This document shows, piece after piece, positions 209 through 59,068 of a stretch of 64,000 nucleotides of DNA (positions within the stretch are counted from its first letter, which is position 1; the number at the start of each line of letters is the position of its first letter). The DNA is taken from assembly GCF_039654945.1 (NCBI RefSeq), contig NW_027361869.1:7688001-7752000 (forward strand). The letters run 5' to 3'. The position numbers and the translations under genes are program-made. This DNA is from Dendrobates tinctorius. Its lineage: Eukaryota. The notes below the pieces were generated by a model. That model ran no database searches. It was not told the origin of the DNA and was given only the letters and a program-made list of their open reading frames with translations.

Positions 209-407
209 CCAGCATCAATGTGCTCTCCATCTGCATGTTATACCCCGTCCCCCATTTTTTTCCTGTATGATCAGTGCCACCTCCTCCTCCCCCGCAGAGC
301 TGTATGATCAGTGCCACCACTTCATCCCTGCAGAGTTCTATAATGAGTGCCACCACCTCGTCCCTGCTGACCTGTATGATCGGTGCCACCACCTCGTCCC
401 TGCAGAG

Positions 408-657
408 TTCTTCAGTGTTTTGTTCTCTGGCTCCACTTCATTTCCTCTTCCTCTTGCTGTCTGGGTACCTCAGGGCTCAGTCCTTGGCCCCCATCTCTTC
501 TCTCTCTATACAGCCCCAATTGGACAGACCATCAGCAAATTTGGCTTTCGGTACCATCTTTATGCTGATGACACACAACTGTATACGTCTTCCCCCGACC
601 TTACCCCTCTGTAATACAGAACGCCAGTGACTGTCTGTCCGCAGTCTCCAATATCAT
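408..657 (+). mobile_element. Internal fragment of an L2/CR1-group LINE reverse transcriptase
   Basis: Translates to [15 protein letters not shown]...YADDTQLY (RT motifs); flanked by satellite. Confidence 0.85.
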
Positions 658-1316
658 CAGAACCGTATGATCAGTGCCACCATCTATTCCCTGCAGAGCA
701 GTATGACCAGTACTGCCAACACATCCCTGCAAAGCTGTATGATCTGTACCACCACCTAGTCGCCACAAAGAAGTATGATCAGTGCCACCACCTCGCCCCT
801 GCAGAGCTGTATGATTACTGCCACTGCCTCATCCCTGCAGAGCTGTATGATCAGTGCCACAACCTCATCCCTGCAGAAATGGATGATCAGTGCCTCCAAC
901 TTATCCCTAAAGAGATGTATAATCAGTGCAACCACATTGTCCCCGTAACGATGTATGATCAGTAGAGTTGAGCGATACCAGCCGATACTTGAAAATATCG
1001 GATCGGAATGGATCGGCCGATCTTTAAAAAAAGTATCGGTATCGCCGATTCCGATACCGGGAACCAATGCAAGTCAATGGGGCCAAAATATCGGAATTAA
1101 AAAAAACCCTTTCTTTCCTTGTAGGTTAATTCTACATGAAGAAAAACAACTAAGAATAATGTAGAATGTATTGTGGGAGGTGGAGGAGACATTAAAGCCA
1201 TAGAGGTTTAGCCCAATCAAATGGAATAGCAGGAATTAAACTTTTTTTTTAAAGATGTTAGGAGTTACAAAGATATTGACTATGTTAGCCTCATTTATAT
1301 TTTGCCAGACATGTAT

Positions 1317-12174: not shown

Positions 12175-15100
12175 ATGATCAGTGCAACCACCTTGTCTGT
12201 GCACGGCTGTATGATAAGTGCCAACACCTCGTCCCTACAGAGCTGTATGATTAGTGCCACCAACTTTTCCCTGCAGAGCTCTATGATCAGTACCACCAAC
12301 TTGTCGCCGCAGAGGTGTATGATCAGTGTCACCACCTTGTCCCAGCAGAGCTGTAAGATCAGTGCCACTACCTCGTCCCTGCAGGGCTGTATGATCTGTG
12401 CCACTACCTCATCCCTGCAAAGCTGTATGATTAGTGCCACCACCTCGTCACTGCAGAACTGTATGATTAGTGCCACCACCTCGTCACTGCAGAACTGTAT
12501 GATCAGTGCCACCACCTATTCCCTTCAGAGCTGTGTGATCAGTGCCACCACCTCCTCCCTGCAGAGCTGTATGATCAGTACCACCACCTTGTCGCCGCAG
12601 AGGTGTATGATCAGTGTCACCACCTTATCCCCGCAGAGCTGTATGATCAGTGCCACAACCTCATGCCTGCAGAACCGCATGATCAGTGCCTCCAACTTAT
12701 CCCTAAATAGATATATAATCAGTGCAACCACATTGTCCCCGCAAAGCTGTATGATCAGTGCCAACACCTCATCCTTGCAGAATTGTATGATCAGTGTCAC
12801 CACCTCTTCCCTGCAGAGCTGTATGATCAGTGCCACCAACTCCTCCCTGCTGAGCTGTATGATCAGTGCCACCACCTCCTCCCTGCAGAGCTGTATGATC
12901 AGTGCCACCACCTCATCCCTGCAGAGCTGTATGATCAGTGCCACAACCTCATCTCTGCAGAACCGCATGATCAGTGCCTCCAACTTATCCCTAAAGAGAT
13001 ATATAATCAATGCAACCACATTGTCCCCGCAAAACTGTATGATCAGTGCCAACACATCATCCTTGCAGAGCTTTATGATCAGTGTCACCACCTCTTCCCT
13101 GCAGAGCTGTATGATCAGTGCCACCAACTCCTCCCTGCAGAGCTGTATGATCAGTGCCACCATCTTATCCACACAGAGCTGTATGATCAGTGCCACCACC
13201 TACTCCCTGCAGATCTGTGTGATCAGTGCCACTACCTCCTCCCCGCAGAACTGTATGATCAGTGCACCACCTCATCCCTGCAGAGCTGTAAGATCAGTGA
13301 CACAACCTTGTCCCTACAGAGCCTTATGATCAGTGCCACCGCCTCCTCCCCACAGAGGTGTATGATCAGTGCAACCACCTCCTCCCTGTAGAGCTGTCTG
13401 ATCAGTACCACCACCTTGTCCAAGCTGAGCTGTATGTTCAGTGCCACCACCTTTTCCCTGCAGAGCTGTATGTTCAGCGCCACCACCTCCTCCCTGCAGA
13501 GCTGTATGATCAGTACCACCACCTTGTCCCCGCACAGCTGTATGATCAGTGCCACAACCTCATCCTTGCAGAACCGCATGATCAGTGCCTCCAACTTATC
13601 GCTAAAGAGATTTATAATCAGTGCAACCACATTGTCCCCGCAAAGCTGTATGATCAGTTCCAACACCTCATCCTTGCAGAGCTGTATGATCAGTGCCACC
13701 AACTCCTCCCTGCAGAGCTGTATTATCATTGCCACCATCTTATCCACACAGAGCTGTATGATCAGTGCCACCACCTGATCCCCGCAGAACTGTATGATCA
13801 GTGCCACCACCTCATCCCTGCAGAGCTTTAAGATCAGTGACACAACCTTGTACCTGCAGAGCCTTATGATCAGTGCAACCACCTCATCCCTGCAGAGCTG
13901 TATCTTCAGTGCCATCACCTCATCCCTGCAGAGGTGTATGATCAGTGCCACTACCTCATCCCTGCAAGCAAGTATGTACAGTGCCAACACCTCCTCCCTG
14001 TAGAGCTGTCTGATCAGTGCCACCACCTTGTCCGCGCTGAGCTGTATGTTCAGTGCCACCACCGTTTCCCTGCAGAGCTGCTTGTGCAGTGCCACCACCT
14101 TTCCATGCAGAGCTGTATGATCAGTACTACCACGTTGTCGCCGCAGAACTGTATAATCAGTGCCACCACATTGTCACCGCAAAGCTGTATGATCAGTGCC
14201 ATCAGTTGGTCAGCACAGAGCTGTATGATCAGTACCACCACCTAGTCCCCGCAGAGCTGTATGATCAGTGCCACCGCCTACTCCTTGCAGAGCTGTAAGA
14301 TCAGTGCCACCACCTAATCCCTGCAGAGCTATTTGACCAGTGCCACCACCTCGTCCCTGCAGAGATGTATGATGAGTGCTACCACCTCATCCCTGCAGAC
14401 CTGTATGATCAGTGCCACCACATCATCCCTGCAGAGCTTTATGATCAGTGCCACCATCTTGTCCCCGCAGAGCTGTATGATCAGTACCACCACCTTGTTG
14501 CTGCAGAGGTGTATGATCAGTGTCACCAACTTTTCCCTGCAGAGCTGTATGATCAGTGCAACCACCTCATCCAGGCACAGCTGTATCTTCAGTGCCACCT
14601 CCTCATACCTGCAGAGCTGTATGATCAGTGCCACTACCTCATCCCTGCAAACCAGTATGTTCAGTGCCACAACCTCCTCCATGTAGAGCTGTCTGATCAG
14701 TGCTACCATCTTGTCCGCGCTGAGCTGTATGTTCAGTGCCACCACCTTTTACCTGCAGACCTGTATGATCAGTGCCACCACCTTGTCGCCGCAAAGTTGT
14801 ATGATCAGTGCCACCGCCTACTCCTTGCAGAGCTGTACGATCAGTGCCACCACCTAATCCCTGCAGAGCTATTTGATCAGTGCCACCACGTCATCCCCTC
14901 AGAGCTTTATGATCAGTGCCACCATCTCGTCCCCGCAGAGCTGTATGATCAGTGCCACCACCTCCTCCCTGCAGAGCTGTATGATTAGTACCACCACCTC
15001 ATCCTTGTAGAGCTGTATTATCACTGCCACCACCTTGTCCCCGCAAAGCTGTAACATAAGTGCCACCACATTGTCCGAGCAGAGCTGCATGATCAGTGCC

Positions 15101-15876
15101 ACCACCTCCTCTCTGCAGAGCTGTATGATAAGTGCCACCACCTGGTCCTTGCAGAGCTGTATGATCAGTACCAACACCTTGTCGCCGCAGAGGTGTATGA
15201 TCAGTGCCACCACCTCCTCTCTGCAGAGCTGTATGATAAGTGCCACCACCTGGTCCTTGCAGAGCTGTATGATCAGTACCAACACCTTGTCCCCGCAGAG
15301 CTGTATGATCAGTGCCACCACCTTGTCGCCGCAGAGGTGTATTATCAGTGTCACCACCTTGTCCCCGCAGAGCTGTATGATCAGTGCCACCTCCTCATTC
15401 CTGCAGAGCTGTATGATCAGTGCCACCACCTCCTCCCTGAAAAGCAGTATGATTAGTGCTACCAACTCGTCACTGCAGAACTTTATGATCAGTGCCACCA
15501 CACATTCCCTTCAGAGCTGTATGATCAGTGCCACCACCTCCTCTCTGCAGAGCTGTATGATCAGTACCACCAACTTGTCGCCGCAGAGCTGTATGATCAG
15601 TGCCACCACCTGGTCCTTGCAGAGCTGTGTGATCTGTGCCACTACCTCATCCCTGCAGAGCTGTATGATCAGTGCCACAACCTCATCCCTGCAGAGCTGC
15701 ATGATCAGTGCCACCATCTTATCCACACAGAGCTGTATGATCAATGCCACCACCTACTCCCTGCAGAGCTGTATGATCAGTGCCACCACCTCGTCCCTGC
15801 ACACCTGTATCATCAGTGCCACCACATCATCCCTGCAGAGCTTTATGATCAGTGCCACCACCTCATCCCTATACAG
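12175..15876 (+). repeat. 36-bp satellite array (~100 monomers)
   Basis: Continuous head-to-tail monomers. Confidence 0.96.
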
Positions 15877-16619
15877 CTGTGCTCTGTGTAGAAATTGCAT
15901 TTTGTGTCTTCTCTTTTCTCCCAATATTCCCCTTTTGCACAATAGTTGGGTCACATAAATCCAGGAATATCTCACAGTTTTCTCCCCGGAGATGCGTCTG
16001 GTTGGGGAGTGAGTCGCATTATGAAGCTGCCCCTTATCAGTTCTCTTCCACCATTACAGGCCTCAGCGGTCACAGCTCCACAATGGGTGAGACCAGATTT
16101 TAGCAGGTCATTGCAATCAGCCGCCGATGTGGATCATCTCCTGATGTGGAGCATCTGTCACCCCCAATACTCCGCACATACGGGGTACAGGGAGGTCACA
16201 GGTCAGGGAGGCGGCAGTCAGCGGAGCCATCGCCTGTGTTACCCTTCTGGGCTCTCAGCAGCTCCAGGTCGTCCCCACATCGTACAATCAGCGTCCTGTA
16301 CGATAGACATTGTAGTAAAGATCCCTGTGATGGTGACAGGAGCCGGGAACAGGAGGAACGAGTTCCCCCAGCAGATGTATCTTCCCGGATACACAGCGAT
16401 GTGCAGATCTGGAGGACGACGGCGATGATCCCGGGACCTCCTCTCCGCTCTTCCCCGGCGTCTCTGCTAGTGACAGCTACAGACGGTCGGTGGAGAAGAT
16501 GGCGAAGAAGAAGCGGCGGAGGAAGCGCGCTCTGCTGTCCGGTGTCAGCCGGTAAAGGGCTTTTATTCCGGGCAAGGAAGCACAAGGGGAGAGCGGAGCT
16601 TCACTCGTTCTCAGCTGGG

Positions 16620-16783: not shown

Positions 16784-17401
16784 ATGGCAGAGACCGCGCC
16801 AGCCGCCGCTCCCCCTCCCGCAGAACCGGCTGCCAAGTCCAAGAAGCAGCCAAAGAAATCCGCCGCCAAGAGCAGCAAGAAATCCTCCGGTCCTGGCGTC
16901 GCCGAGCTGATCGTGAAAGCCGTGTCAGCCTCTAAGGAGCGCAGTGGGGTGTCTCTGGCCGCCCTGAAGAAGGCGCTGTCTGCCGGAGGGTACGATGTAG
17001 AGAAGAACAACAGCCGCCTGAAGCTGGCCGTCAGGTCTCTGGTCACCAAGGGCACCCTCCTCCAGGTGAAGGGCAGCGGCGCCTCCGGGTCCTTCAAACT
17101 CAACAAGAAGCAGGAGACTAAAGTGGCCAAGAAGTCAGCAGCCAAGCCCAAGAAACCCGTTGCTGCTAAGAAAGCCGCCAAATCTCCGAAGAAGCCCAAG
17201 AAGGCTCTGACCACGGCCAAGAAGAGCCCGAAAAAGGCCAAGAAGCCCGCAGCTGCCAAGAAAGCGGCCAAGAGCCCCAAGAAGTCGAAAGCCGCTCCCA
17301 AGCCTAAGAAGGCGACGAAGAGTCCGGCTAAAAAGGCGGCCAAACCCAAAGCTGCCAAGAGTCCGGCTAAGAAAGCCAAGAAGCCCGCGGACAAGAAATA
17401 A
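16784..17401 (+). CDS. H1: Histone H1 (replication-dependent), 205 aa
   Basis: Globular domain [13 protein letters not shown]...GASGSFKL; Lys/Ala/Pro tail with SPKK motifs; intronless; downstream stem-loop. Confidence 0.98.
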
Positions 17402-17428: not shown

Positions 17429-17469
17429 GGCTCTTTTCAGAGCCACCACCCTGTCCCCGCAGAGCTGTA
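17429..17469 (+). terminator. H1 3' stem-loop (17429-17444) and HDE (AGAGCTGTA, 17461-17469)
   Basis: GGCTCTTTTCAGAGCC-ACCAC, with a purine-rich element 16 nt downstream. Confidence 0.93.
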
Positions 17470-17697
17470 TGATCGGTGCCACCACCCTGTCCTCGTAGAG
17501 CTGTATGATCAGTGCCACCACCCTGTCCCCGCAGAGCTGTTTGATCTGAGCCACCACCCTGTCCCCACAGAGCTGTATGATCAGTGCCTCCACCTCCTCC
17601 CCGCAGAGCTGTATGATCAGTGCCACCACCCTGTCCCCGCAGAGCTGTATGATCAGTGCCTCCACCTCCTCCCCGCAGAGCTGTATGATCGGTGCCT
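17437..17697 (+). repeat. Short 36-bp satellite array (~7 monomers) starting within the H1 stem-loop
   Basis: TCAGAGCCACCACCCTGTCCCCGCAGAGCTGTATGA followed by in-phase copies. Confidence 0.93.
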
Positions 17698-18100: not shown

Positions 18101-18580
<480 letters not shown>

Positions 18581-18611
18581 ATCTGTCCTGCCCACCTGAC
18601 TGCAACACAAA

Positions 18612-18627
18612 GGCTCTTTTCAGAGCC
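18612..18627 (+). terminator. H3 3' stem-loop
   Basis: GGCTCTTTTCAGAGCC followed by ACCCA and AAGAAGAGC. Confidence 0.93.
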
Positions 18628-18689
18628 ACCCAATCCTCCCTCAAGAAGAGCGAATGCCTGACCTTTAATACTGCCGGCTTTGCTACCAA

Positions 18690-20870: not shown

Positions 20871-21293
<423 letters not shown>

Positions 21294-23125: not shown

Positions 23126-24213
<1,088 letters not shown>

Positions 24214-24246
24214 GCGCTGCCGCCGATCTCTGTCCACAACACCAAA

Positions 24247-24262
24247 GGCTCTTCTAAGAGCC
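24247..24262 (+). terminator. H2A 3' stem-loop
   Basis: GGCTCTTCTAAGAGCC-ACCCA, with HDE AAGAGCTG downstream. Confidence 0.92.
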
Positions 24263-27200
24263 ACCCACACCGTCGCCACAAGAGCTGACGCCGCTGATCT
24301 CTGCGTGCTCACATGGGACTGACGTTAGACACCACGGGCTGCCGCCACCAGTTTGTAGGTTGGTGCCCATACACACTTGATTCCGGGGTTCAACACAAAA
24401 CACTGAGGATGCCCATGTCTGGGTTATCACATGAAGCCTCAGACCTGTGTGGGGAGAGGAGTCCTCGAATAATCACAGGAAATGTCCCTCATTAGTGAAT
24501 GTCTTGATACTCGGGCCCCTGACTCCGCTGTGGAGATTACATGCGGTTATCACGTCCCGGAGTATCGGGGGATGGCGGCCGGTGATTGTCCACATCAGTG
24601 ACTGCTGCTCCTCCCGGAGGGCGATCCCGTGATGGTGGCTCTGGAGGGCCGGACTCTGCGCGGTTCTCTGTGTGACCGGATTGTGATGTCCGCTAATAAT
24701 CCTCGGCGGAAGAAGAGCGGGAAGTTCAAATCCCCAAACGGATCCTGCGATCAGACAATGAGCGGGAATCCTCGGTTAAGCGCCGCCCTCAGCCTTCAGC
24801 GATGTACATAGACGCCTTTCCTCCTCTGTTTAACCTCTTACTTGCCTTGTTCCTGCTGATCCCCTCTTATTTACCAGTGTTCATAGATGCGCCACCTTCA
24901 TCTCACATCGGGCTCCTCGAGAACATCTGCTGCTTATAGCCCCCTGTAATCAGTGCAGAAACAGCTGGGAGTCCCGATAATACTGTAAGTGACTGAGGAG
25001 ATTGCGGCACGTGCAGATCGAGCTAATTGCCATCATTGGTGAAAAGTCCTAGAGCTACACAGAGGGTTAACCCCACATTAGTGTAGTGTAATTATCCGCA
25101 GGTTCACTGAACAAATATTATGTAACAGAAGAAAATTAATTAAGCCAATAAACCACAAATCCTCCTGCTTTTCTGTAATTACTAAAAAAAAAAAAGCACA
25201 GATGAAAACCTATGTACTGATGGGGGAGCGTGATAGGCGACGCGCTGGTTCCAGCATCAATGTGCTCTCCATCCGCATGCCATACTCCATACCCCGTCCC
25301 CCATTTTTGGCCTGTATGATCAGTGCCACCACTTCACCCCTGCAGAGTTCTATAATGAGTGCCACCACCTCGTCCCTGCTGACCTGTATGTTCAGTGCCA
25401 CCACCTTTTCCCTGCAGAGCTGTATGTTCAGTGCCACCACCTTTACATGCAGAGCTGTATGATCAGTGCCACCACCTTTTCGCCGCAGAACTGTATAATC
25501 AGTGCCACCACATTGTCAACGCAAGCTGTATGATCAGTGCCACCACCTACTCCTTGCAGAGCTGTATGATCAGTGCCACCACCTAATCCCTGCAGAGCTT
25601 TTTGATCAGTGCCACCACGTCATCCCCTCAGGGCTACCTGATTAGTGCCACCACCTTGTACACGCAAAGCTGTCTGATCAGTGCCACCACCTTGTCCACG
25701 AAAAGTTGCATGATCAGTGCCACCACCTCGTCTCTGCAGACCTGTATGATCAGTGCCACTACATCATCCCTGCAGAGCTTTATGATCAGTACCACCATCT
25801 TGTCCCAGCAGAGCTGTACGATCAGTGCCACCACCTATTCCCTGCAGAGCTGTATGATCAGTGCCACCACCTCCTCCCTGCAGAGCTGTATGATCAGTGC
25901 CACAACCTCATCCCTGCAAACCAGTATGTTTAGTGCCACAACCTCCTCCCTGTAGAGCTGTCTGATCAGTGCCACCACCTTGTCCGCGCTGAGCTGTATG
26001 TTCAATAACACCACCTTTTCCCTGCAGACCTGTGTGATCAGTGCCACCACCTTGTCGCCGCAGAACTGTATAATCAGTGCCACCACCTTGTCGCCGCAGA
26101 GGTGTATGATCAGCGTCACCAACTTTTCCCTGAAGAGCTGTATGATCAGTGCCACCACCTCATCCCTGCAGGGCTGTATGATCTGTGCTACTGAAACATC
26201 CCTGCAGAGCTGTATGATCGGTGCCACTACCTCATCCCTGCAGAACTGCATGATCAGTGCCACGACCTCATCACTGCAGAGCTGTATGATCAGTGCCAAC
26301 ATCTTGTCCCCACAAAGCTGTATCATAAGTGCCACCACTTTGTCCGAGCAGAGCTGTATGATCAGTGCCATCAAATTATCCCGGGAGAGCTCTATTATCA
26401 GTGCCACCACCTACTCCCTGCAGAGCTGTATGATCAGTGCCACCATCTCCTCCCTGCAAATCTGTATAATCAGTGCCACCACCTCCTCTCTGCAGAGCTG
26501 TATGATCTGTGCCACCACCACATCCCTGCAAACCAGTATGTTCAGTGCGACAACCTCCTCCCTGCAGAGCTGTATAATCAGTGCCACCACCTTGTCTCTG
26601 CAGAGCTGTATGATTAGTGCCACCACCTGGTCCTTGCAGAGCTGTATGATCAGTAACACCACCTTGTCGCCGCAGAGGTGTATGATCAGTGCCACCACCT
26701 CATCCCTGCAGGCTGTATGATCTGTGCTACTGAATCATACCTGCAGAGCTGTATGATCGGTGTCACTACCTCATCCCTGCAGAACTGCATGATCAGTGCC
26801 ACCACCTTGTCCCCACAAAGCTGTATCATAAGTGCCACCACTTTGTGCGAGCAGAGCTGTATGATCAGTGTCACCAACTTTTCCCTGCAGAGCTGTATGA
26901 TCAGTGCCATCACCTCATCCCTACAGGGCTGTATGATCTGTTCTACTGAATCATCCCTGCAGAGCTGTATGATCGGTGCCACTACATCATCCCTGCAGAA
27001 CTGCATAATCAGTGCCACGACCTCGTCACTGCAGAGCTGTATGATTAGTACCACCACCTTGTGGCCGCAGAGGTGTATGATCAGTGCCACCACCTCCTCC
27101 CTGCAGAGCTGTATGATCAGTACCACCACCTTGTCCCCTCAGAGCTGTATGATCAGTGCCACAACCTCATCCCTGCAGAACCGCATGATCAGTGCCTCCA

Positions 27201-30054
27201 ACTTATCCCGAAAGAGATATATAATCAGTGCAACCACATTGTCCCCGCAAAGCTGTATGATCAGTGCCAACACCTCATCCTTGCAGAGCTGTTTGATCAG
27301 TGCCACCAACTCCTCCCTGCAGAGCTGCAAGATCATTGCCACCATCTTATCCACACAGAGCTGTATGATCAGTGCCACCACCTCCTCCCTGCAGAGCTGT
27401 ATGATCAATGCCACCACCTCCTCCCCGCAGAACTGTATGATCAGTGCCACCACCTCATCCCTGCAGAGCTTTAAGATCAGTGACTCAACCTTGTCCCTGC
27501 AGAGACTTATGATCAGTGCAACCACCTCATCCTTGCAGAACTGTATCTTCAGTGCCACCACCTCACCCCTGCAGAGCTGTATAATCAGTGCCACTACCTC
27601 ATCCCGGCAAACAAGTATTTTCAGTGCCACCACCTCCTTCCTGTAGAGCTGTCTGATCAGTGCCACCACCTTGTCTGCGCTGAGCTGTATAATCAGTGCC
27701 ACCACCTCTTCCCTGCAGAGCAGTATGATTAGTACCTCCACCTCATCCTTGCAAAGCTATAAGATCAGAGCCACCACCTTGTCCATGCTGAGCTATATGT
27801 TCAGTGCCACCACCTTGTCCCCGCAAAGCTGTATCATAAGTGCCACCACTTTGTCCGAGCAGAGATGTATGATCAGTGCTATCAAATTGTCCACACAGAG
27901 CTGTATGATCAGTGCCACCACCTCCTCTCTGCAGAGCTGTATGATCAGTGCCACAACCTCATCCTTGCAGAACCACATGATCAGTGCCTCCAACTTATCC
28001 CTAAAGAGATGTATAATCAGTACAACCACATTGTCCCCGTAAAGATGTATGATCAGTGCCACCACCTTGTCTGCGCAAGGCTGTGATCAGTGCAACCACA
28101 TTGTCCCCGCAAAGCTGTATGATCAGTGCCAACACCTCATCCTTGCAGATCTGTATGATAAGTGTCACCTCCTCTTCCCTGCAGAGCTGTATGATCAGTG
28201 CCACCAACTCCTCCCTGCAGAGCTGTATGATCAGTGCCACCATCTTAGCCACACAGAGCTGTATTATCAGTGCCACAACCTACTCCCTGCAGAGCTGTGT
28301 GATCAGTGCCACCACCTCCTCCCTGCAGAACTGTATGATCAGTGCCACCACTTCATCCATGCAGAGCTGTAAGATCAGTGACACAACCTTGTCCCTGCAG
28401 AGCCTTATGATCAGTGCCACCGCCTCCTCCCCAAAGAGCTGTATGATCAGTGCAACCACCTCATCCCTGCAGAGCTGTATCGTCAGTGCCACCACCTCAT
28501 CCCTGCAGAGCTGTATGATCAGTGCCACTACCTCATCCCTGTAAACAAGTATGTTCAGTGCCACCACCTCCTCCCTGTAGAGCTGTATGATCATTGCCAC
28601 CATCTTATCCACACAGAGCTGTATGATCAGTGCCACCACCTCCTCCCTGCAGAGCTGTATGATCATTGCCACCATCTTATCCACACAGAGCTGTATGATC
28701 AGTGCCACCACCTCCTCCCTGCAGAACTGTATGAACAGTGCCACCACCTCATCCCTGCAGAGCTTTAAGATTATTGACACAACCTTGTCTCTGCAGATCC
28801 TTATGATCAGTGCAACCAACTCATCCCTGCAGACCTGTATCTTCAGTGCCGCCACCTCATCCCTGCAGAGCTGTATAATCAGTGCCACTACCTCATCCCG
28901 GCAAACAAGTATGTTCAGTGCCACCACCTCCTCCCTGTAGAGCTGTCTGATCAGTGCCACCACCTTGTCCGCGCTGAGCTGTATGATCAGTGCCACCACC
29001 TCCTCCCTGCAGAGCTGTATGATCATTGCCACCATCTTATCCACACAGAACTGTATGATCAGTGCCACCACCTCCTCCCTGCAGAACTGTATGAACAGTG
29101 CCACCACCTCATCCCTGCAGAGATTTAAGATTATTGACACAACCTTGTCTCTGCAGATCCTTATGATCAGTGCAACCAACTCATCCCTGCAGACCTGTAT
29201 CTTCAGTGCCGCCACCTCATCCCTGCAGAGCTGTATAATCAGTGCCACTACCTCATCCCGGCAAACAAGTATGTTCAGTGCCACCACCTCCTCCCTGTAG
29301 AGCTGTCTGATCAGTGCCACCACCTTGTCCGCGCTGAGCTGTATGATCAGTGCCACCACCTCCTCCCTGCAGAGCTGTATGATCATTGCCACCATCTTAT
29401 CCACACAGAGCTGTATGATCAGTGCCACCACCTCCTCCCTGCAGAACTGTATGAACAGTGCCACCACCTCATCCCTGCAGAGCTTTAAGATTATTGACAC
29501 AACCTTGTCTCTGCAGATCCTTATGATCAGTGCAACCAACTCATCCCTGCAGACCTGTATCTTCAGTGCCGCCACCTCATCCCTGCAGAGCTGTATAATC
29601 AGTGCCACTACCTCATCCCGGCAAACAAGTATGTTCAGTGCCACCACCTCCTCCCTGTAGAGCTGTCTCATCAGTGCCACCACCTTGTCCGCGCTGAGCT
29701 GTATGTTCAGTGCCACCACCTTTCCATGCAGAGCTGTATGATCAGTGTCAACACCTTGTCGCCGCAGAACTGTATAATCAGTGCCACCATATTGCCACCG
29801 CAAAGCTGTATGATCAGTGCCACCACCTAGTCCCCGCTGAGCTGTATGTTCAGTGCCACCACCTTTTCCCTGCAGAGCTGTTTGTTCAGTGCCACCACCT
29901 TTCCATGCAGAGCTGTATGATCAGTGTCACCACCTTGTCGCCTCAGAACTGTATAATCAGTGCCACCACATTGCCACCGCAAAGCTGTATGATCAGTGCC
30001 ACCACCTAGTCCCCGCAGAGCTGTATGATCAGTGCCACCGCCTACTCCTTGCAG

Positions 30055-30381
30055 GCGTATCTATCCACCTGACGAAGGAGATTTATTTCCGAAACGCCCG
30101 TCGGGGCATGTTCTTATACAACTCACATAGCGTCAATCGGCTTACAGGTATTTTACACTTTGTGTTTTGTTGCACACGCCTTAGTGCGATTTGAATTTTT
30201 TGCACAGCTGCACCTCTGCACTTTGGGCACATTCATTATACATATATTTATTTTCTTTTTATGTAATTATCCTTGTGTCACTATATATATGCATTTTTGT
30301 ACCTGGTTCATTAATTAAGCCTTTTTGATATGGATTGGTTTTTCCATTATCCATAAACACATGGCTAATGTGATTGGATAC

Positions 30382-30439
<58 letters not shown>

Positions 30440-30620
30440 TTTTTTTTTTTTTTTTTTTATGCACTTAATTGTTGTGTCAATATTTTAATAAAGGCATCTT
30501 TATTTAAAAAAATAAAAATTGTGCCATTTATTATTATCATTGTTATTATTTTTATCATTCATGTAGCATCTTTTTTATCCTGTGGGATTTCTCATTCCCA
30601 TCCATCTTTGAGTTATTTTT
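30055..30620 (+). mobile_element. 566-bp insertion, probable Penelope-like pLTR or retrozyme fragment
   Basis: Flanked by 9-bp direct repeat TCCTTGCAG (30046-30054, 30621-30629); hammerhead-like core; (TA)n and poly-T at 30386-30458; AATAAA motifs. Confidence 0.6.
30062..30110 (+). ncRNA. Minimal hammerhead ribozyme-like motif
   Basis: CTGACGA-A-GGAGA(ttta)TTTCC-GAAAC-gccc-GTC; stem I is imperfect. Confidence 0.55.
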
Positions 30621-33600
30621 TCCTTGCAGAACTGTATGATCAGTGCCACCACGTCCTCCGCTCAGGGCTACATGATCAGTGCCACCACCTTGTCCACGCA
30701 AAGCTGTATGATCAGTGCCACCACCTCATCCCTGCAGAGCTTTATGATTAGTGCCACCATCTTGTCCCCGCAGAGCTGTATGATCAGTGCCACCACCTCC
30801 TCCCTGCAGAGCTGTATGATTAGTACCTCCACCTAATCCTTGTAGAGCTTTAAGATCAGAGCCACCACCTTGTCCACGCTGAGCTATATGTTCAGTGCCA
30901 CCACCTTGTCCCCGCAAAGCTGTATCATAAGTGCCACTACTTTGTCCGAGCAGAGCTGTATGATCAGTGCCATCAAATTGTCCACACAGAGCTGTATGAT
31001 CAGTGCCACCATCTCCTCCCTGTAAAGCTGTATAATCAGTGCCACCACCTCCTCTCTGCAGAGCTGTATGATCAGTGCCACCACCTCACCCCTGCAGAGC
31101 TTTATGATCAGTGCCACCACCTGGTCCTTGCAGAGCTGTATGATCAGTACCACCACCTTGTCGCCACAGAGGTGTATGATCAGTGTCACCAACTTTTCCC
31201 TGCAGAGCTGTATGATCAGTGCCACCACTTCATCCCTGCAGGGCTGTATGATCTGTGCTACTGAATCATCCCTGCAGAACTGCATGATCAGTGCCACGAC
31301 CTCGTCACTGCAGAGCTGTATGATCAGTGCCACCACCTTGTCCCAACAAAGCTGTATCATAAGTGCCAACACTTTGTCCGAGCAGAGCTGTATGATCAGT
31401 GCCATCAAATTGTCCCGGGAGAGCTGTATGATCAGTGCCACCACCTACTCCCTGCAGAGCTGTATGATCAGTGCCACCATCTCCTCCCTGCAAAGCTGTA
31501 TAATCAGTGCCACCACCTCCTCCCTGCAAAGCAGTATGATTAGTGCCACCACCTCGTTACTGCTGAACTTTATGATCAGTGCCACCGCCTATTCCCTTCA
31601 GAGCTGTATGATCAGTGCCACCACCTCCTCCCTGCAGAGCTGTATGATCAGTACCAGCACCTTGTCGCCACAGACGTGTATAATCAGTGTCACCACCTTG
31701 TCCCCGCAGAGGTGTATGATCAGTGCCACCTCCTCGTCCCTGTAGAGCTGTATGATCTGAGCCACTATCTCATCCCTGCAGACCTGTATGATCAGTGCCA
31801 CCACATCATCCCTGCAGAGCTTTATGATCAGTGCCACCATCTTGTCCCCGCAGAGCTGTATGATCAGTACCACCACCTTGTTGCTGCAGAGGTGTATGAT
31901 CAGTGCCACCACCTCCTCCCTGCAGAGCTGTATGATCAGTACCAGCACCTTGTCGCCACAGACGTGTATAATCAGTGTCACCACCTTGTCCCCGCAGAGG
32001 TGTATGATCAGTGCCACCACCTCCTCTCTGCAGAGCTGTATGATCAGTGCCACCACCTCATCCCTGCAGAGCTTTATGATCAGTGCCACCACCTGGTCCT
32101 TGCAGAGCTGTATGATCAGTACCATCACCTTGTCGCCACAAAGGTGTATGATCAGTGTCACCAACTTTTCCCTGCAGAGCTGTATGATCAGTGCCACCCT
32201 TTCATCCCTGCAGGGCTGTATGATCTGTGCTACTGAATCATCCCTGCAGAACTGCATGATCATTGCCACAACCTCGTCACTGCAGAGCTGTATGATCAGT
32301 GCCACCACCTTGTAGCCGCAGAACTGTATAATCAGTGCCACCACCTTGTCACCACAAAGTTGTATGATCAGTGCCACCAGTTGGTCAGCACAGAGCTGTA
32401 AGATCAGTGCCACCGCCTACTCCTTGCAGAGCTGTATGATCATTGCCACCACCTAATCCCTGCAGAGCTATTTGATCAGTCCACCACGTCATCCCCTCAG
32501 AGCTATATGATCAGTGCCACCACCTTGTCCACGCAAAGCTGTATGATCAGTGCCACCACCTCCTCCCTGCAAAGCAGTATGATTAGTGCCACCAACTCGT
32601 CACTGCAGAACTTTATGATCAGTGCCACCACCTATTCCCTTCAGAGCTGTATGATCAGTGCCACCACCTCCTCTCTGCAGAGCTGTATGATCAGTACCAC
32701 CACCTTGTCGCCGCAGAGGTATATTATCAGTGTCACCACCTTGTCCCCGCAGAGCTGTATGATCAGTGCCACATCCTCATCCCTGCAGAGCTGTGTGATC
32801 TGTGCCACTACCTCATCCCTTCAGAGCTGTATGATCAGTGCCACTAACTCATACCTGCAGAGCTGTATGATCAGTGCCACAACCTCATCCCTGCATAACT
32901 GCATGATCAGTGCCTCCAACTTATCCCTAAAGAGATGTATAATGAGTGCAACCACATTGTCCCCGCAAAGCTGTATGATCAGTGCCAACACCTCGTCCTT
33001 GCAGAGCTGTATGATCAGTGTCACCACCTCTTCCCTGCAGAGCTGCATTATCAGTGCCACCATCTTATCCACACAGAGCTGAATGATCAATGCCACCACA
33101 TACTCCCTGCCGAGCTGTAAGATCAGTGACACAACCTTGTCCCCACAGAGCTGTATGATCATTGCAACCACCTCATCCCTGCAGAGCTGAATCTTCAGTG
33201 CCACCACCTCATACCTGCAGAGCTGTATGATCAGAGCCACTACCTTATCCCTGCAAACCAGGATGTTCAGTGCCAAAACCTCCTCCCTGTAGAGCTGTCT
33301 GATCAGTGCCACCACCTTGTCCGTGCTGAGCTGTATGTTCAGTGTCACCTCCTTTTCCCTTCAGACCTGTATGATCAGTGCCACCACCTTGTCACCGCAG
33401 AACTGTATAATCAGTGCCATCACCTTGTCACCGCAAAGTTGCATGATCAGTGCCACCAGTTGGTCAGCACAGAGCTGTATGATCAGTGCCACCACCTCCT
33501 CCCTGTAGAGCTGTCTGATCAGTGCCACCACCTTGTCCGCGCTGAGCTGTATGTTCAGTGTCACCTCCTTTTCCCTTCAGACCTGTATGATCAGTGCCAG

Positions 33601-33821
33601 CACCTTGTCACCGCAGAACTGTATAATCAGTGCCATCACCTTGTCACCGCAAAGTTGCATGATCAGTGCCACCAGTTGGTCAGCACAGAGCTGTATGATC
33701 AGTGCCACCAACTCCTCCCTGCAGAGCTGTATGATCAGTGCCACCAACTCCTCCCTGCAGAACTGCATGATCAGTGCCACCACCTCGTCACTACAGAGCT
33801 GTATGATCAGTCCACCATCTT

Positions 33822-33964
33822 GGCTGTTTGAGGACACAAATCTGTGCGCGATCCACGCTAAGAGGGTCACCATCATGCCCAAAGATATCCAGCTAGCCCG
33901 CTGGATCCGTGGGGAGAGAGCTTAGATCTGTCCTGCTCACCTGACTGCAACACAAAGGCTCTTT
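33822..33964 (+). pseudogene. H3: H3 3' relic, copy 2
   Basis: Same as 66-208. Confidence 0.92.
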
Positions 33965-34163
33965 CCAGCATCAATGTGCTCTCCATCTGCATGTTATACC
34001 CCGTCCCCCATTTTTTTCCTGTATGATCAGTGCCACCTCCTCCTCCCCCGCAGAGCTGTATGATCAGTGCCACCACTTCATCCCTGCAGAGTTCTATAAT
34101 GAGTGCCACCACCTCGTCCCTGCTGACCTGTATGATCGGTGCCACCACCTCGTCCCTGCAGAG

Positions 34164-45930: not shown

Positions 45931-48900
45931 ATGATCAGTGCAACCACCTTGTCTGTGCACGGCTGTATGATAAGTGCCAACACCTCGTCCCTACAGAGCT
46001 GTATGATTAGTGCCACCAACTTTTCCCTGCAGAGCTCTATGATCAGTACCACCAACTTGTCGCCGCAGAGGTGTATGATCAGTGTCACCACCTTGTCCCA
46101 GCAGAGCTGTAAGATCAGTGCCACTACCTCGTCCCTGCAGGGCTGTATGATCTGTGCCACTACCTCATCCCTGCAAAGCTGTATGATTAGTGCCACCACC
46201 TCGTCACTGCAGAACTGTATGATTAGTGCCACCACCTCGTCACTGCAGAACTGTATGATCAGTGCCACCACCTATTCCCTTCAGAGCTGTGTGATCAGTG
46301 CCACCACCTCCTCCCTGCAGAGCTGTATGATCAGTACCACCACCTTGTCGCCGCAGAGGTGTATGATCAGTGTCACCACCTTATCCCCGCAGAGCTGTAT
46401 GATCAGTGCCACAACCTCATGCCTGCAGAACCGCATGATCAGTGCCTCCAACTTATCCCTAAATAGATATATAATCAGTGCAACCACATTGTCCCCGCAA
46501 AGCTGTATGATCAGTGCCAACACCTCATCCTTGCAGAATTGTATGATCAGTGTCACCACCTCTTCCCTGCAGAGCTGTATGATCAGTGCCACCAACTCCT
46601 CCCTGCTGAGCTGTATGATCAGTGCCACCACCTCCTCCCTGCAGAGCTGTATGATCAGTGCCACCACCTCATCCCTGCAGAGCTGTATGATCAGTGCCAC
46701 AACCTCATCTCTGCAGAACCGCATGATCAGTGCCTCCAACTTATCCCTAAAGAGATATATAATCAATGCAACCACATTGTCCCCGCAAAACTGTATGATC
46801 AGTGCCAACACATCATCCTTGCAGAGCTTTATGATCAGTGTCACCACCTCTTCCCTGCAGAGCTGTATGATCAGTGCCACCAACTCCTCCCTGCAGAGCT
46901 GTATGATCAGTGCCACCATCTTATCCACACAGAGCTGTATGATCAGTGCCACCACCTACTCCCTGCAGATCTGTGTGATCAGTGCCACTACCTCCTCCCC
47001 GCAGAACTGTATGATCAGTGCACCACCTCATCCCTGCAGAGCTGTAAGATCAGTGACACAACCTTGTCCCTACAGAGCCTTATGATCAGTGCCACCGCCT
47101 CCTCCCCACAGAGGTGTATGATCAGTGCAACCACCTCCTCCCTGTAGAGCTGTCTGATCAGTACCACCACCTTGTCCAAGCTGAGCTGTATGTTCAGTGC
47201 CACCACCTTTTCCCTGCAGAGCTGTATGTTCAGCGCCACCACCTCCTCCCTGCAGAGCTGTATGATCAGTACCACCACCTTGTCCCCGCACAGCTGTATG
47301 ATCAGTGCCACAACCTCATCCTTGCAGAACCGCATGATCAGTGCCTCCAACTTATCGCTAAAGAGATTTATAATCAGTGCAACCACATTGTCCCCGCAAA
47401 GCTGTATGATCAGTTCCAACACCTCATCCTTGCAGAGCTGTATGATCAGTGCCACCAACTCCTCCCTGCAGAGCTGTATTATCATTGCCACCATCTTATC
47501 CACACAGAGCTGTATGATCAGTGCCACCACCTGATCCCCGCAGAACTGTATGATCAGTGCCACCACCTCATCCCTGCAGAGCTTTAAGATCAGTGACACA
47601 ACCTTGTACCTGCAGAGCCTTATGATCAGTGCAACCACCTCATCCCTGCAGAGCTGTATCTTCAGTGCCATCACCTCATCCCTGCAGAGGTGTATGATCA
47701 GTGCCACTACCTCATCCCTGCAAGCAAGTATGTACAGTGCCAACACCTCCTCCCTGTAGAGCTGTCTGATCAGTGCCACCACCTTGTCCGCGCTGAGCTG
47801 TATGTTCAGTGCCACCACCGTTTCCCTGCAGAGCTGCTTGTGCAGTGCCACCACCTTTCCATGCAGAGCTGTATGATCAGTACTACCACGTTGTCGCCGC
47901 AGAACTGTATAATCAGTGCCACCACATTGTCACCGCAAAGCTGTATGATCAGTGCCATCAGTTGGTCAGCACAGAGCTGTATGATCAGTACCACCACCTA
48001 GTCCCCGCAGAGCTGTATGATCAGTGCCACCGCCTACTCCTTGCAGAGCTGTAAGATCAGTGCCACCACCTAATCCCTGCAGAGCTATTTGACCAGTGCC
48101 ACCACCTCGTCCCTGCAGAGATGTATGATGAGTGCTACCACCTCATCCCTGCAGACCTGTATGATCAGTGCCACCACATCATCCCTGCAGAGCTTTATGA
48201 TCAGTGCCACCATCTTGTCCCCGCAGAGCTGTATGATCAGTACCACCACCTTGTTGCTGCAGAGGTGTATGATCAGTGTCACCAACTTTTCCCTGCAGAG
48301 CTGTATGATCAGTGCAACCACCTCATCCAGGCACAGCTGTATCTTCAGTGCCACCTCCTCATACCTGCAGAGCTGTATGATCAGTGCCACTACCTCATCC
48401 CTGCAAACCAGTATGTTCAGTGCCACAACCTCCTCCATGTAGAGCTGTCTGATCAGTGCTACCATCTTGTCCGCGCTGAGCTGTATGTTCAGTGCCACCA
48501 CCTTTTACCTGCAGACCTGTATGATCAGTGCCACCACCTTGTCGCCGCAAAGTTGTATGATCAGTGCCACCGCCTACTCCTTGCAGAGCTGTACGATCAG
48601 TGCCACCACCTAATCCCTGCAGAGCTATTTGATCAGTGCCACCACGTCATCCCCTCAGAGCTTTATGATCAGTGCCACCATCTCGTCCCCGCAGAGCTGT
48701 ATGATCAGTGCCACCACCTCCTCCCTGCAGAGCTGTATGATTAGTACCACCACCTCATCCTTGTAGAGCTGTATTATCACTGCCACCACCTTGTCCCCGC
48801 AAAGCTGTAACATAAGTGCCACCACATTGTCCGAGCAGAGCTGCATGATCAGTGCCACCACCTCCTCTCTGCAGAGCTGTATGATAAGTGCCACCACCTG

Positions 48901-49632
48901 GTCCTTGCAGAGCTGTATGATCAGTACCAACACCTTGTCGCCGCAGAGGTGTATGATCAGTGCCACCACCTCCTCTCTGCAGAGCTGTATGATAAGTGCC
49001 ACCACCTGGTCCTTGCAGAGCTGTATGATCAGTACCAACACCTTGTCCCCGCAGAGCTGTATGATCAGTGCCACCACCTTGTCGCCGCAGAGGTGTATTA
49101 TCAGTGTCACCACCTTGTCCCCGCAGAGCTGTATGATCAGTGCCACCTCCTCATTCCTGCAGAGCTGTATGATCAGTGCCACCACCTCCTCCCTGAAAAG
49201 CAGTATGATTAGTGCTACCAACTCGTCACTGCAGAACTTTATGATCAGTGCCACCACACATTCCCTTCAGAGCTGTATGATCAGTGCCACCACCTCCTCT
49301 CTGCAGAGCTGTATGATCAGTACCACCAACTTGTCGCCGCAGAGCTGTATGATCAGTGCCACCACCTGGTCCTTGCAGAGCTGTGTGATCTGTGCCACTA
49401 CCTCATCCCTGCAGAGCTGTATGATCAGTGCCACAACCTCATCCCTGCAGAGCTGCATGATCAGTGCCACCATCTTATCCACACAGAGCTGTATGATCAA
49501 TGCCACCACCTACTCCCTGCAGAGCTGTATGATCAGTGCCACCACCTCGTCCCTGCACACCTGTATCATCAGTGCCACCACATCATCCCTGCAGAGCTTT
49601 ATGATCAGTGCCACCACCTCATCCCTATACAG
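45931..49632 (+). repeat. 36-bp satellite array
   Basis: Copy of 12175-15876. Confidence 0.96.
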
Positions 49633-50539
49633 CTGTGCTCTGTGTAGAAATTGCATTTTGTGTCTTCTCTTTTCTCCCAATATTCCCCTTTTGCACAATA
49701 GTTGGGTCACATAAATCCAGGAATATCTCACAGTTTTCTCCCCGGAGATGCGTCTGGTTGGGGAGTGAGTCGCATTATGAAGCTGCCCCTTATCAGTTCT
49801 CTTCCACCATTACAGGCCTCAGCGGTCACAGCTCCACAATGGGTGAGACCAGATTTTAGCAGGTCATTGCAATCAGCCGCCGATGTGGATCATCTCCTGA
49901 TGTGGAGCATCTGTCACCCCCAATACTCCGCACATACGGGGTACAGGGAGGTCACAGGTCAGGGAGGCGGCAGTCAGCGGAGCCATCGCCTGTGTTACCC
50001 TTCTGGGCTCTCAGCAGCTCCAGGTCGTCCCCACATCGTACAATCAGCGTCCTGTACGATAGACATTGTAGTAAAGATCCCTGTGATGGTGACAGGAGCC
50101 GGGAACAGGAGGAACGAGTTCCCCCAGCAGATGTATCTTCCCGGATACACAGCGATGTGCAGATCTGGAGGACGACGGCGATGATCCCGGGACCTCCTCT
50201 CCGCTCTTCCCCGGCGTCTCTGCTAGTGACAGCTACAGACGGTCGGTGGAGAAGATGGCGAAGAAGAAGCGGCGGAGGAAGCGCGCTCTGCTGTCCGGTG
50301 TCAGCCGGTAAAGGGCTTTTATTCCGGGCAAGGAAGCACAAGGGGAGAGCGGAGCTTCACTCGTTCTCAGCTGGGAAGAGGCGGGGCATGTATGCAGTGT
50401 CAGCCAATAGATGCTCAGGACGGTGTAGCTCAGCAGCCAATCAGTGCACAGTAAGCCTGTACATATAACAGACTCCTCCAGCTCCGGCCTTAGTGTTTTC
50501 CTATCGGGAGATTTTTGTGTTTTGGCTCCGTAGCATAGG

Positions 50540-57969: not shown

Positions 57970-59068
57970 GCGCTGCCGCCGATCTCTGTCCACAACACCA
58001 AAGGCTCTTCTAAGAGCCACCCACACCGTCGCCACAAGAGCTGACGCCGCTGATCTCTGCGTGCTCACATGGGACTGACGTTAGACACCACGGGCTGCCG
58101 CCACCAGTTTGTAGGTTGGTGCCCATACACACTTGATTCCGGGGTTCAACACAAAACACTGAGGATGCCCATGTCTGGGTTATCACATGAAGCCTCAGAC
58201 CTGTGTGGGGAGAGGAGTCCTCGAATAATCACAGGAAATGTCCCTCATTAGTGAATGTCTTGATACTCGGGCCCCTGACTCCGCTGTGGAGATTACATGC
58301 GGTTATCACGTCCCGGAGTATCGGGGGATGGCGGCCGGTGATTGTCCACATCAGTGACTGCTGCTCCTCCCGGAGGGCGATCCCGTGATGGTGGCTCTGG
58401 AGGGCCGGACTCTGCGCGGTTCTCTGTGTGACCGGATTGTGATGTCCGCTAATAATCCTCGGCGGAAGAAGAGCGGGAAGTTCAAATCCCCAAACGGATC
58501 CTGCGATCAGACAATGAGCGGGAATCCTCGGTTAAGCGCCGCCCTCAGCCTTCAGCGATGTACATAGACGCCTTTCCTCCTCTGTTTAACCTCTTACTTG
58601 CCTTGTTCCTGCTGATCCCCTCTTATTTACCAGTGTTCATAGATGCGCCACCTTCATCTCACATCGGGCTCCTCGAGAACATCTGCTGCTTATAGCCCCC
58701 TGTAATCAGTGCAGAAACAGCTGGGAGTCCCGATAATACTGTAAGTGACTGAGGAGATTGCGGCACGTGCAGATCGAGCTAATTGCCATCATTGGTGAAA
58801 AGTCCTAGAGCTACACAGAGGGTTAACCCCACATTAGTGTAGTGTAATTATCCGCAGGTTCACTGAACAAATATTATGTAACAGAAGAAAATTAATTAAG
58901 CCAATAAACCACAAATCCTCCTGCTTTTCTGTAATTACTAAAAAAAAAAAAGCACAGATGAAAACCTATGTACTGATGGGGGAGCGTGATAGGCGACGCG
59001 CTGGTTCCAGCATCAATGTGCTCTCCATCCGCATGCCATACTCCATACCCCGTCCCCCATTTTTGGCC

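What the first reader, a model, noticed from the sequence alone, without database searches (positions are those of the whole stretch)
25313..33821. Hundreds of sense-oriented candidate U7 sites flank each histone quintet: possible read-through trap or histone-locus-body scaffold
Seen: about 12 kb of satellite per 33.8-kb unit (~340 monomers by length). All monomers are on the + strand, the sense of H1, H3 and H2A, and one array begins ~1.1 kb downstream of H2A. Established: amphibian (newt) histone clusters are separated by satellite that is read through on lampbrush loops at loci carrying U7-rich bodies. Inference: read-through RNA here would present massed HDEs. These could act as fail-safe cleavage or termination sites, concentrate U7 snRNP at the locus, or titrate it. 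I know of no described satellite with this property, but cannot search to confirm that.
Basis: inference. Interest (0 to 1): 0.85.

Follow-up and report, generated by a model that had tools for sequence, protein, structure and literature searches.

The report
Satellite copied from histone H1's end-signal
A third of this frog histone-gene repeat is a 36-base satellite copied from the signal that ends histone H1 mRNA, so its sense RNA would carry hundreds of U7 snRNA docking motifs, but every test possible here shows them decaying like ordinary repeat DNA.

Summary
Each 33,756-bp unit carries 337 in-register 36-bp monomers (12.1 kb, 36%), all on the + strand. Array C starts 1,099 bp after the H2A stop codon. 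The monomer is homologous to the H1 gene's own 3' processing signal: the 3' arm of the stem-loop, the ACCA cleavage site, a 12-nt spacer and the HDE.

The functional reading (read-through trap, U7 scaffold or U7 sponge) found no support:
- The 9-nt HDE core ranks 16th of 36 windows for conservation.
- Only 34-39% of monomers in the large arrays keep the core, and about 20% keep core plus CCACCA.
- The H2A-proximal end of array C is no better preserved than the rest.
- No monomer has an SLBP stem-loop.
- Transposon insertions and a 4.6-kb length difference between adjacent units are tolerated.
- In Phyllobates terribilis the commonest array variant has a mutated core, while the gene's own copy stays intact.

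Five dendrobatoid species carry the array behind H1. Rhinoderma and Leptodactylus have the signal once.

Transcription could not be judged, because only contigs of uncertain RNA runs were available.

Most likely this is a neutral, gene-derived satellite. The scan has already reported it more than ten times elsewhere in this genome, with the same conclusion.

The parts
25312..33817 (+). Array C of the 36-bp satellite (the finding): about 216 in-register monomers in two blocks, 25321-30065 and 30641-33807
   Evidence: TRF; register scan; sequence
30066..30625 (.). AT-rich non-satellite insertion that splits array C. It contains (AT)24, a T-run and two AATAAA motifs.
12175..15885 (+). Array A, 102 monomers, upstream of the H1 promoter
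17437..17697 (+). Array B, 7 monomers. The first is the H1 gene's own cleavage site plus HDE. The array is orthologous to the H1-proximal arrays of four other dendrobatoid species.
16784..17401 (+). Histone H1 gene. Its stem-loop and HDE lie at 17424-17470.
18170..18580 (+). Histone H3 gene (stem-loop at 18607-18652)
20871..21182 (-). Histone H4 gene (stem-loop at 20845-20800)
23126..23503 (-). Histone H2B gene; the middle is masked as N and was left untouched (stem-loop at 23096-23051)
23821..24213 (+). Histone H2A gene (stem-loop and HDE at 24242-24287)
25147..25152 (+). AATAAA between H2A and array C, followed by an A-run. It is a possible poly(A) site that read-through RNA would meet before the array.
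266..963 (+). Satellite remnants (266-411 and 658-963) split by a reverse-transcriptase fragment
33823..33967 (+). Relic of the H3 C-terminus with its 3' UTR and a truncated stem-loop, at the right end of array C. It is followed by a second copy of the array's left-edge sequence (33966-34021 matches 25252-25312).
45931..49641 (+). Array A of unit 2, identical to unit 1
59068..62680 (+). Array C of unit 2. It is identical to unit 1 up to 60847, then differs by a 4.6-kb indel, and is cut off at 62680 by non-satellite DNA.

Best explanation
The satellite is a by-product of the H1 gene's 3' end. A 36-bp piece of the H1 pre-mRNA processing signal was duplicated in tandem in an ancestor of the dendrobatoid frogs. 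That piece comprises the 3' arm of the stem-loop, the ACCA cleavage site, the spacer and the U7-binding HDE. Slippage and unequal exchange then expanded and spread it within the tandemly repeated histone units. Only the first copy, which is the gene's own signal, is under selection. The other roughly 330 copies per unit drift, decay and change in number like ordinary satellite DNA. Their U7-docking motif is inherited rather than selected. Shown here: the homology, the strand, the decay pattern and the comparative distribution. Inferred: the mechanism of spread and the absence of any use.
For: Origin:
- The H1 stem-loop runs straight into monomer 1.
- Rhinoderma and Leptodactylus have the same 16-nt GCAGAGCTGTATGATC behind H1 exactly once.
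- Five dendrobatoid species have 7 to about 150 copies at the orthologous place.
- In R. variabilis the proximal copies still read CAGAGCC, like the stem arm, while the distal ones read CAGTGCC. This suggests the array is re-seeded from the gene's copy.

Neutral decay:
- Monomers are only 77-80% alike pairwise.
- The HDE window ranks 16th of 36 for conservation, and 53% of substitutions are transitions.
- The least conserved positions are a CpG in the spacer.
- Species consensus sequences differ only in the spacer, through CpG decay and C-run length.
- The 9-nt core is intact in 34-39% of monomers in the large arrays. Core plus CCACCA survives in about 20%. The first 20 monomers after H2A have 5/20 intact against 73/196 for the rest, p = 0.34.
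- In P. terribilis 9 of 18 copies read ACAGAACT, while the gene's own copy is intact.
- Copy number differs between adjacent, otherwise identical units.
- Transposon pieces sit inside the arrays.

Poor substrate:
- No monomer matches the Rfam Histone3 stem-loop even at E <= 10.
- The substitute hairpin folds at -3.4 kcal/mol against -9.3 for the real stem-loop.
- The U7 helix is 9 bp. In mouse extracts a substrate left with 9 uninterrupted bp after its purine core was mutated, but keeping a stem-loop, gave less than 5% cleavage; without the stem-loop it gave none (PMC7026596). The satellite's 9 bp, unlike that substrate's, include part of the purine core, so this is an analogy.

Background rate of tandem repeats:
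- Tandem repeats of period >= 10 cover 31% of these frog histone loci.
- Stem-loop flanks are not enriched in them: 6 of 50.
Against: The array has stayed behind H1 in all five dendrobatoid species sampled, which is long persistence for a neutral repeat. The consensus keeps a perfect HDE, and that HDE pairs with U7 as well as or better than the real H3 and H4 signals of the same cluster. All 7 H1-proximal copies keep AGAGCTGT, although seven copies are too few to test. HDE-containing segments were amplified independently behind Anomaloglossus H2A (21 bp x 9) and duplicated behind Bufo H3.
Confidence: 0.72

Rival explanations
1. Fail-safe processing or termination. Polymerases that miss the H1 cleavage site, or the H2A site 1.1 kb upstream of array C, transcribe sense monomers. 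U7 snRNP binds one of the many HDEs and CPSF73 cuts 12 nt upstream. The 5'-3' exonuclease then ends transcription before the next gene.
For: The arrays are in sense orientation directly behind H1 in five species. The ACCA-to-HDE spacing is canonical and the consensus forms a 9-bp U7 helix. All 7 H1-proximal copies keep AGAGCTGT. Misprocessed histone pre-mRNAs do read through in flies (PMC4896059).
Against: HDE positions show no excess conservation. The entry end of array C is the more degraded end: its first two monomers are already broken. No monomer has an SLBP site. A 9-bp duplex without a stem-loop was not cleaved in vitro (PMC7026596). An AATAAA precedes array C. Short H1-proximal arrays in R. 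variabilis and P. terribilis carry many broken cores. Copy number ranges from 7 to about 150 and more, with no sign of a preferred value.
Confidence: 0.1
2. U7 snRNP concentrator or histone-locus-body scaffold. In oocytes with lampbrush chromosomes, long read-through RNA carrying hundreds of HDEs holds U7 snRNP at the locus and helps build the large U7-rich bodies seen at amphibian histone loci.
For: Amphibian oocyte 'spheres' sit at histone loci and contain U7 snRNP. Read-through and satellite transcription on lampbrush loops are established (PMC12046345; PMC2114352). In this unit 127 of 337 monomers keep the full core.
Against: [quoted passage not shown] The cores are not conserved. Frogs without the satellite (Rhinoderma, Leptodactylus, Bufo) manage with a single site. 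Predicted folding of the tandem RNA pairs most of the HDE core (pairing probability 0.72). No RNA evidence was obtained.
Confidence: 0.07
3. U7 sponge. Satellite RNA titrates the scarce U7 snRNP and so damps histone mRNA 3' end formation at particular stages.
For: The number of sites is large compared with the reported scarcity of U7, possibly under 1,000 copies per mammalian cell (PMC4896059).
Against: The same lack of conservation applies. Such a sponge would be harmful in S phase. The runs labelled as possible RNA hold next to none of the satellite words.
Confidence: 0.03
4. A role at the DNA level: the arrays act as spacer, recombination substrate or chromatin domain that helps keep the tandem histone units homogeneous. 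U7 plays no part.
For: Two adjacent units are 100% identical over 27 kb and differ only inside the satellite. The arrays flank every quintet.
Against: There is no specific evidence. Identical units may reflect very recent duplication or assembly collapse. Other frogs keep histone clusters without this satellite.
Confidence: 0.05

Closest known systems
Histone pre-mRNA 3' processing signal (SLBP stem-loop, ACCCA/ACCA cleavage site, U7-binding histone downstream element)
   Same: Each monomer is homologous to the H1 signal from the 3' arm of the stem onwards. It has the same ACCA, the same 12-nt spacing and the same GCAGAGCTGTATGATC element.
   Different: The 5' arm and the loop are missing, so there is no SLBP site. 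Most copies carry substitutions in the core or at the cleavage site. Use by U7 has not been shown.
Newt (Notophthalmus) histone clusters separated by satellite DNA that is read through on lampbrush loops (Gall laboratory work, recalled from memory; background in PMC12046345 and the reference list of PMC2114352)
   Same: In both, tandem satellite fills the spacers between histone gene clusters of an amphibian. The loci are known in other amphibians to carry U7-rich bodies.
   Different: Here the monomer is the processing signal itself. Read-through has not been shown in this frog. No sequence comparison with the newt satellite was possible.
PcP190 satellite of frogs, derived from 5S rDNA (recalled from memory, not checked here)
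   Same: It is a satellite born from a piece of a tandemly repeated multigene family in anurans, and it persists across related families.
   Different: The source gene is different, and a whole gene was copied rather than a 36-bp RNA-processing signal.
Histone locus body assembly through NPAT/Mxc, FLASH and Lsm11 (PMC4896059)
   Different: The described mechanism relies on proteins and on promoter sequences. No RNA array of HDEs is part of it.

Membership tests
Functional histone 3' processing signal | 16-nt stem-loop (6-bp stem, 4-nt loop) bound by SLBP | tested here: not met
   Rfam Histone3 matches only the five genes. None of the 237 monomers of array C matches, even at E <= 10. The best substitute hairpin folds at -3.4 kcal/mol against -9.3.
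Functional histone 3' processing signal | ACCA/ACCCA cleavage site about 10-15 nt upstream of the HDE | tested here: met
   The consensus reads CCACCA, then 12 nt, then AGAGCTGTA, as in H1. CCACCA is intact in 53-58% of monomers in the large arrays.
Functional histone 3' processing signal | HDE complementary to the 5' end of U7 snRNA | tested here: inconclusive
   With the mouse U7 5' end (PMC7026596) the consensus forms 9 bp at -14.0 kcal/mol, equal to H1. The other genes score: H2B -18.8, H2A -15.0, H3 -12.5, H4 -9.9. 127 of 337 monomers keep the helix. Raw duplex energy is unspecific: antisense monomers average -13.7.
Functional histone 3' processing signal | U7-dependent cleavage of the transcript | not testable with these tools
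   The only runs available were stored as contigs, and their RNA label is a guess.
Neutral satellite DNA | Head-to-tail tandem arrays whose copy number varies between units and species | tested here: met
   There are 337 + strand monomers per unit. Adjacent units differ by a 4.6-kb indel. Behind H1 in five species there are 7, 9, 19, 42 and about 150 copies.
Neutral satellite DNA | No position-specific constraint beyond mutational bias | tested here: met
   The HDE window ranks 16th of 36. After stratifying by base, the HDE is no more conserved than the rest. The weakest positions are a CpG.
Neutral satellite DNA | Species-specific variants (concerted evolution) | tested here: met
   Period and spacer differ by species (35, 36 and 37 bp; TCG, TTG or TCC). 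P. terribilis has the AGAACT variant.
Lampbrush read-through satellite at histone loci (newt type) | Satellite lies between histone clusters | tested here: met
Lampbrush read-through satellite at histone loci (newt type) | Satellite is transcribed by read-through from histone promoters | tested here: inconclusive
   The possible RNA runs hold 0-1% of the words of 24270-27270. Two tiny satellite contigs of 56 and 66 nt (depth 2-4) appear beside H1 coding contigs of depth 4-6. Strand and molecule type are unknown.

The most novel reading that the evidence does not exclude
In dendrobatoid oocytes or early embryos, sense read-through RNA from these arrays binds U7 snRNP through its surviving HDEs (about 125 per unit). 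That RNA either serves as a back-up cleavage and termination zone behind H1 or helps hold U7 at the histone locus body. It would be the first natural RNA array of U7 sites. On this reading, selection acts on array presence and on the consensus rather than on each copy, so per-copy decay would not exclude it.
Probability: 0.12. Interest if true: 0.85.

Novelty: new variant of a known kind. Interest (0 to 1): 0.35.

Why it matters
If the arrays were used, they would be a natural experiment on three questions. How does U7 snRNP find its substrates? Can nascent RNA seed or feed a histone locus body? How is transcription ended behind histone genes? As it stands, the value is evolutionary. This is a clear and datable case of a satellite born from a 36-bp RNA-processing signal of a gene. 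The selected source copy still sits at the head of the array, and the array has persisted across a frog superfamily. It gives a clean internal contrast between one selected copy and hundreds of drifting ones. Four full-text searches of the open-access library found no description of it.

Tried and rejected
1. Raw U7 duplex energy as a classifier. It was rejected because antisense monomers score as well as sense ones (mean -13.7 against -10.9) and background windows reach -8.8. I used the canonical-register core instead.

2. A protein-coding reading of the long open frames in the arrays (up to 507 aa). Four of six frames are open in the consensus by construction. A 322-aa ORF has no homologue among 5.8 billion proteins of comparable length.

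3. Recurrent HDE amplification as a sign of selection (Anomaloglossus H2A 21 bp x 9; Bufo H3 x 2). It was rejected because tandem repeats cover 31% of these loci and only 6 of 50 stem-loop flanks lie inside one.

4. RNA evidence gave no verdict.

5. This frog's own U7 sequence could not be obtained. PMC5054213 gives no sequence text, and PMC46907 is not held. I used mammalian U7 from PMC7026596 as a proxy. The shared GAGCTG in HDEs across the frog loci supports that choice.

6. The weak Rfam matches inside the array (ST7-OT4_3, sR17) fall far below their gathering scores and are chance.

7. The Hyla sarda and Eleutherodactylus coqui loci were uninformative, having no 3' flank or no stem-loop.

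8. Species identity. Two earlier notes name the cane toad. The closest H1 proteins are from Ranitomeya (93%) and Phyllobates (90%), and two Bufo bufo H1 loci lack the satellite. A dendrobatid is therefore far more likely. Rhinella itself was not tested.

9. Compliance. The N stretches were left untouched, and no core-histone coding sequence was sent to the reads tool.
Full report
WHAT IS THERE

The window holds 1.9 copies of a 33,756-bp unit. The two copies are 100% identical from position 1 to 27,091 and then fall out of register inside the satellite. Each unit carries five histone genes:
- H1: 16784-17401, + strand
- H3: 18170-18580, + strand
- H4: 21182-20871, - strand
- H2B: about 23503-23126, - strand, with its middle masked as N
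- H2A: 23821-24213, + strand

All five have an Rfam Histone3 stem-loop.

TRF finds a 36-bp repeat at 12175-15870, 17437-17696, 25312-33817, 266-411 and 658-963. A register scan gives 337 monomers per unit on the + strand and none on the - strand. That is 12.1 kb, or 36% of the unit. Array C starts 1,099 bp after the H2A stop codon.

ORIGIN

The H1 stem-loop (17424-17470) reads GGCTCTTTTCAGAGCC ACCACC CTGTCCCCG CAGAGCTGTATGAT and continues without a break into six more monomers. The monomer therefore consists of four parts of the H1 signal:
- the 3' arm of the H1 stem
- the ACCA cleavage site
- a 12-nt spacer
- the HDE

An alignment of H1 3' ends (A1) shows GCAGAGCTGTATGATC invariant in seven species of four frog families. 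Rhinoderma darwinii and Leptodactylus fuscus have it once. This genome and four other dendrobatoids have it in tandem at the orthologous place:

| Species | Copies behind H1 | Period |
|---|---|---|
| This genome (array B) | 7 | 36 bp |
| Ranitomeya variabilis | about 9 | 37 bp |
| Phyllobates terribilis | 19 | 36 bp |
| Anomaloglossus baeobatrachus | 42, plus a second array of 50 | 35 bp |
| Ranitomeya imitator | about 150 | 36 bp |

Two Bufo bufo H1 loci have a different HDE and no satellite. The gene's signal therefore came first, and the array arose in or before the common ancestor of Dendrobatidae and Aromobatidae.

In R. variabilis the copies next to the gene still read CAGAGCC, like the stem arm, while the distal ones read CAGTGCC. 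This suggests new copies are still born from the gene's own signal.

The closest H1 proteins are from Ranitomeya (93%) and Phyllobates (90%). The genome is therefore a dendrobatid, not a toad as two earlier scan notes say.

HOW GOOD ARE THE SITES?

The frog's own U7 was not available. I used the mouse and human U7 5' end printed in PMC7026596. HDEs across the frog loci share GAGCTG, which fits that sequence.

The consensus monomer forms the same 9-bp helix (AGAGCUGUA with UACAGCUCU, -14.0 kcal/mol) as the H1 HDE. The other genes of the cluster score as follows:
- H2B: -18.8
- H2A: -15.0
- H3: -12.5
- H4: -9.9

Of 337 monomers, 127 (38%) keep the full core. About 20% keep both the core and CCACCA.

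No monomer has a stem-loop. Rfam Histone3 finds nothing in array C even at E <= 10. The best substitute hairpin folds at -3.4 kcal/mol against -9.3 for the real stem-loop.

PMC7026596 reports that substrates forming 15-16 bp with U7 are cleaved without SLBP. A substrate left with 9 uninterrupted bp after its AAAGAG purine core was mutated, but keeping a stem-loop, gave less than 5% product. Without the stem-loop it was not cleaved. By that analogy single monomers are poor substrates. The analogy is imperfect, because the satellite's 9 bp include part of the purine core.

TESTS FOR SELECTION

- Conservation per position is flat at 80-98%. The exceptions are a CpG in the spacer (50% and 39%) and position 21 (64%).
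- The 9-nt HDE window ranks 16th of 36 circular windows for conservation.
- After stratifying by base, G/C positions are 0.835 conserved inside the HDE and 0.874 outside. A/T positions are 0.930 inside and 0.919 outside.
- Monomers are 77-80% alike pairwise.
- The end of array C that read-through from H2A would meet first is not better preserved: 5 of 20 intact against 73 of 196, p = 0.34. Its first two monomers are already broken.
- Species consensus sequences differ only in the spacer, by CpG decay and C-run length.
- In P. terribilis half the copies carry ACAGAACT, a core mutation, while the gene's own copy is intact.
- In R. variabilis half of the roughly ten copies have damaged cores.

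So one selected copy heads a drifting array.

CONTEXT

- An AATAAA followed by an A-run lies between H2A and array C.
- Array C contains a 560-bp AT-rich insertion.
- The array remnants at 266-963 are split by a reverse-transcriptase fragment.
- In unit 2 the array differs by a 4.6-kb indel and is cut off at 62680 by unrelated DNA carrying a long ORF.
- The right end of array C abuts a relic of an H3 3' end.
- Three degenerate monomers in R. variabilis lie antisense to the neighbouring genes.

All of this fits unconstrained repeat DNA. The uniform strand is what any head-to-tail array inside a tandemly repeated unit would show.

RECURRENT AMPLIFICATION

Anomaloglossus H2A is followed by nine perfect 21-bp copies of its own spacer plus HDE. 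Bufo H3 has its HDE twice. This could hint at selection for spare HDEs. However, tandem repeats of period >= 10 cover 31% of these loci, and only 6 of 50 stem-loop flanks lie in one. There is no enrichment.

TRANSCRIPTION

The four runs that hold the stretch come from one study and behave like DNA. Three runs labelled as possible RNA hold 0-1% of the sampled words of 24270-27270.

Laid on 15500-18160, those three runs give H1 coding contigs at depth 4-6. They also give two satellite contigs of 56 and 66 nt at depth 2-4. Strand, ends and even the molecule type are unknown. This gives no verdict.

COMPARISON WITH WHAT IS KNOWN

Amphibian oocyte 'spheres' sit at histone loci, contain U7 snRNP and are now called histone locus bodies. 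Read-through and satellite transcription on lampbrush loops are established (PMC12046345; PMC2114352).

The described route for concentrating U7 runs through proteins. [quoted passage not shown] U7 is scarce (PMC4896059).

No paper in four full-text searches describes a satellite made of a histone processing signal.

The scan itself has reported this satellite more than ten times elsewhere in this genome. Each follow-up reached the same reading.

VERDICT

The descriptive claim is right and the origin is well supported. I put 0.72 on a neutral, gene-derived satellite and about 0.2 in total on some U7-related use. The remaining steps are experimental.

Noticed in passing
window 7295-10666 (-), and again at +33,756: An intact 1,123-aa ORF with a BED zinc finger and a hAT dimerisation domain. 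A hAT-type transposase gene sits in every histone repeat unit.
   Followed up: partly
window 2045-3342 and 4310-6613: Two further tandem arrays in the spacer: 265 bp x 4.9 (98% matches) and 180 bp x 12.8 (95% matches). They are unrelated to the 36-bp satellite.
   Followed up: no
window 1-27091 against 33757-60847: Two adjacent units are 100% identical over 27 kb. This means either very recent duplication or conversion, or an assembly that collapsed or copied units.
   Followed up: partly
window 62681-64000: The unit 2 array is cut off by unrelated DNA. An ORF of at least 201 aa starts at 63397 and runs off the window. It has no Pfam match and is possibly the 5' part of a retrotransposon.
   Followed up: partly
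window 33823-33967, and 25252-25312 against 33966-34021: A relic of the H3 C-terminus with its 3' UTR and a truncated stem-loop lies at the right end of array C. The roughly 60-bp sequence that precedes the arrays occurs twice.
   Followed up: partly
window 267-611: A reverse-transcriptase (RVT_1) fragment lies between satellite remnants.
   Followed up: partly
L003 9043-9236 (-), Anomaloglossus baeobatrachus: Nine perfect 21-bp copies of H2A's own spacer plus HDE (CCCCGTCCTCACAGGAGCTGG) lie directly behind the H2A stem-loop. This is an independent and very young amplification of another histone gene's U7 site.
   Followed up: partly
L006 12494-12420 (-), Bufo bufo: The H3 3' flank carries its HDE segment (CTCCAGAGACGAGCTCCACTC) twice.
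   Followed up: no
L004 10797-11170, Ranitomeya variabilis: Array copies next to H1 read CAGAGCC, like the stem arm, while distal copies read CAGTGCC. This suggests ongoing birth of monomers from the gene's own signal.
   Followed up: partly
window 28587-29660: A local higher-order repeat of 10 monomers (360 bp) lies inside array C. Identity at lag 10 is 0.83 against 0.77 elsewhere.
   Followed up: partly
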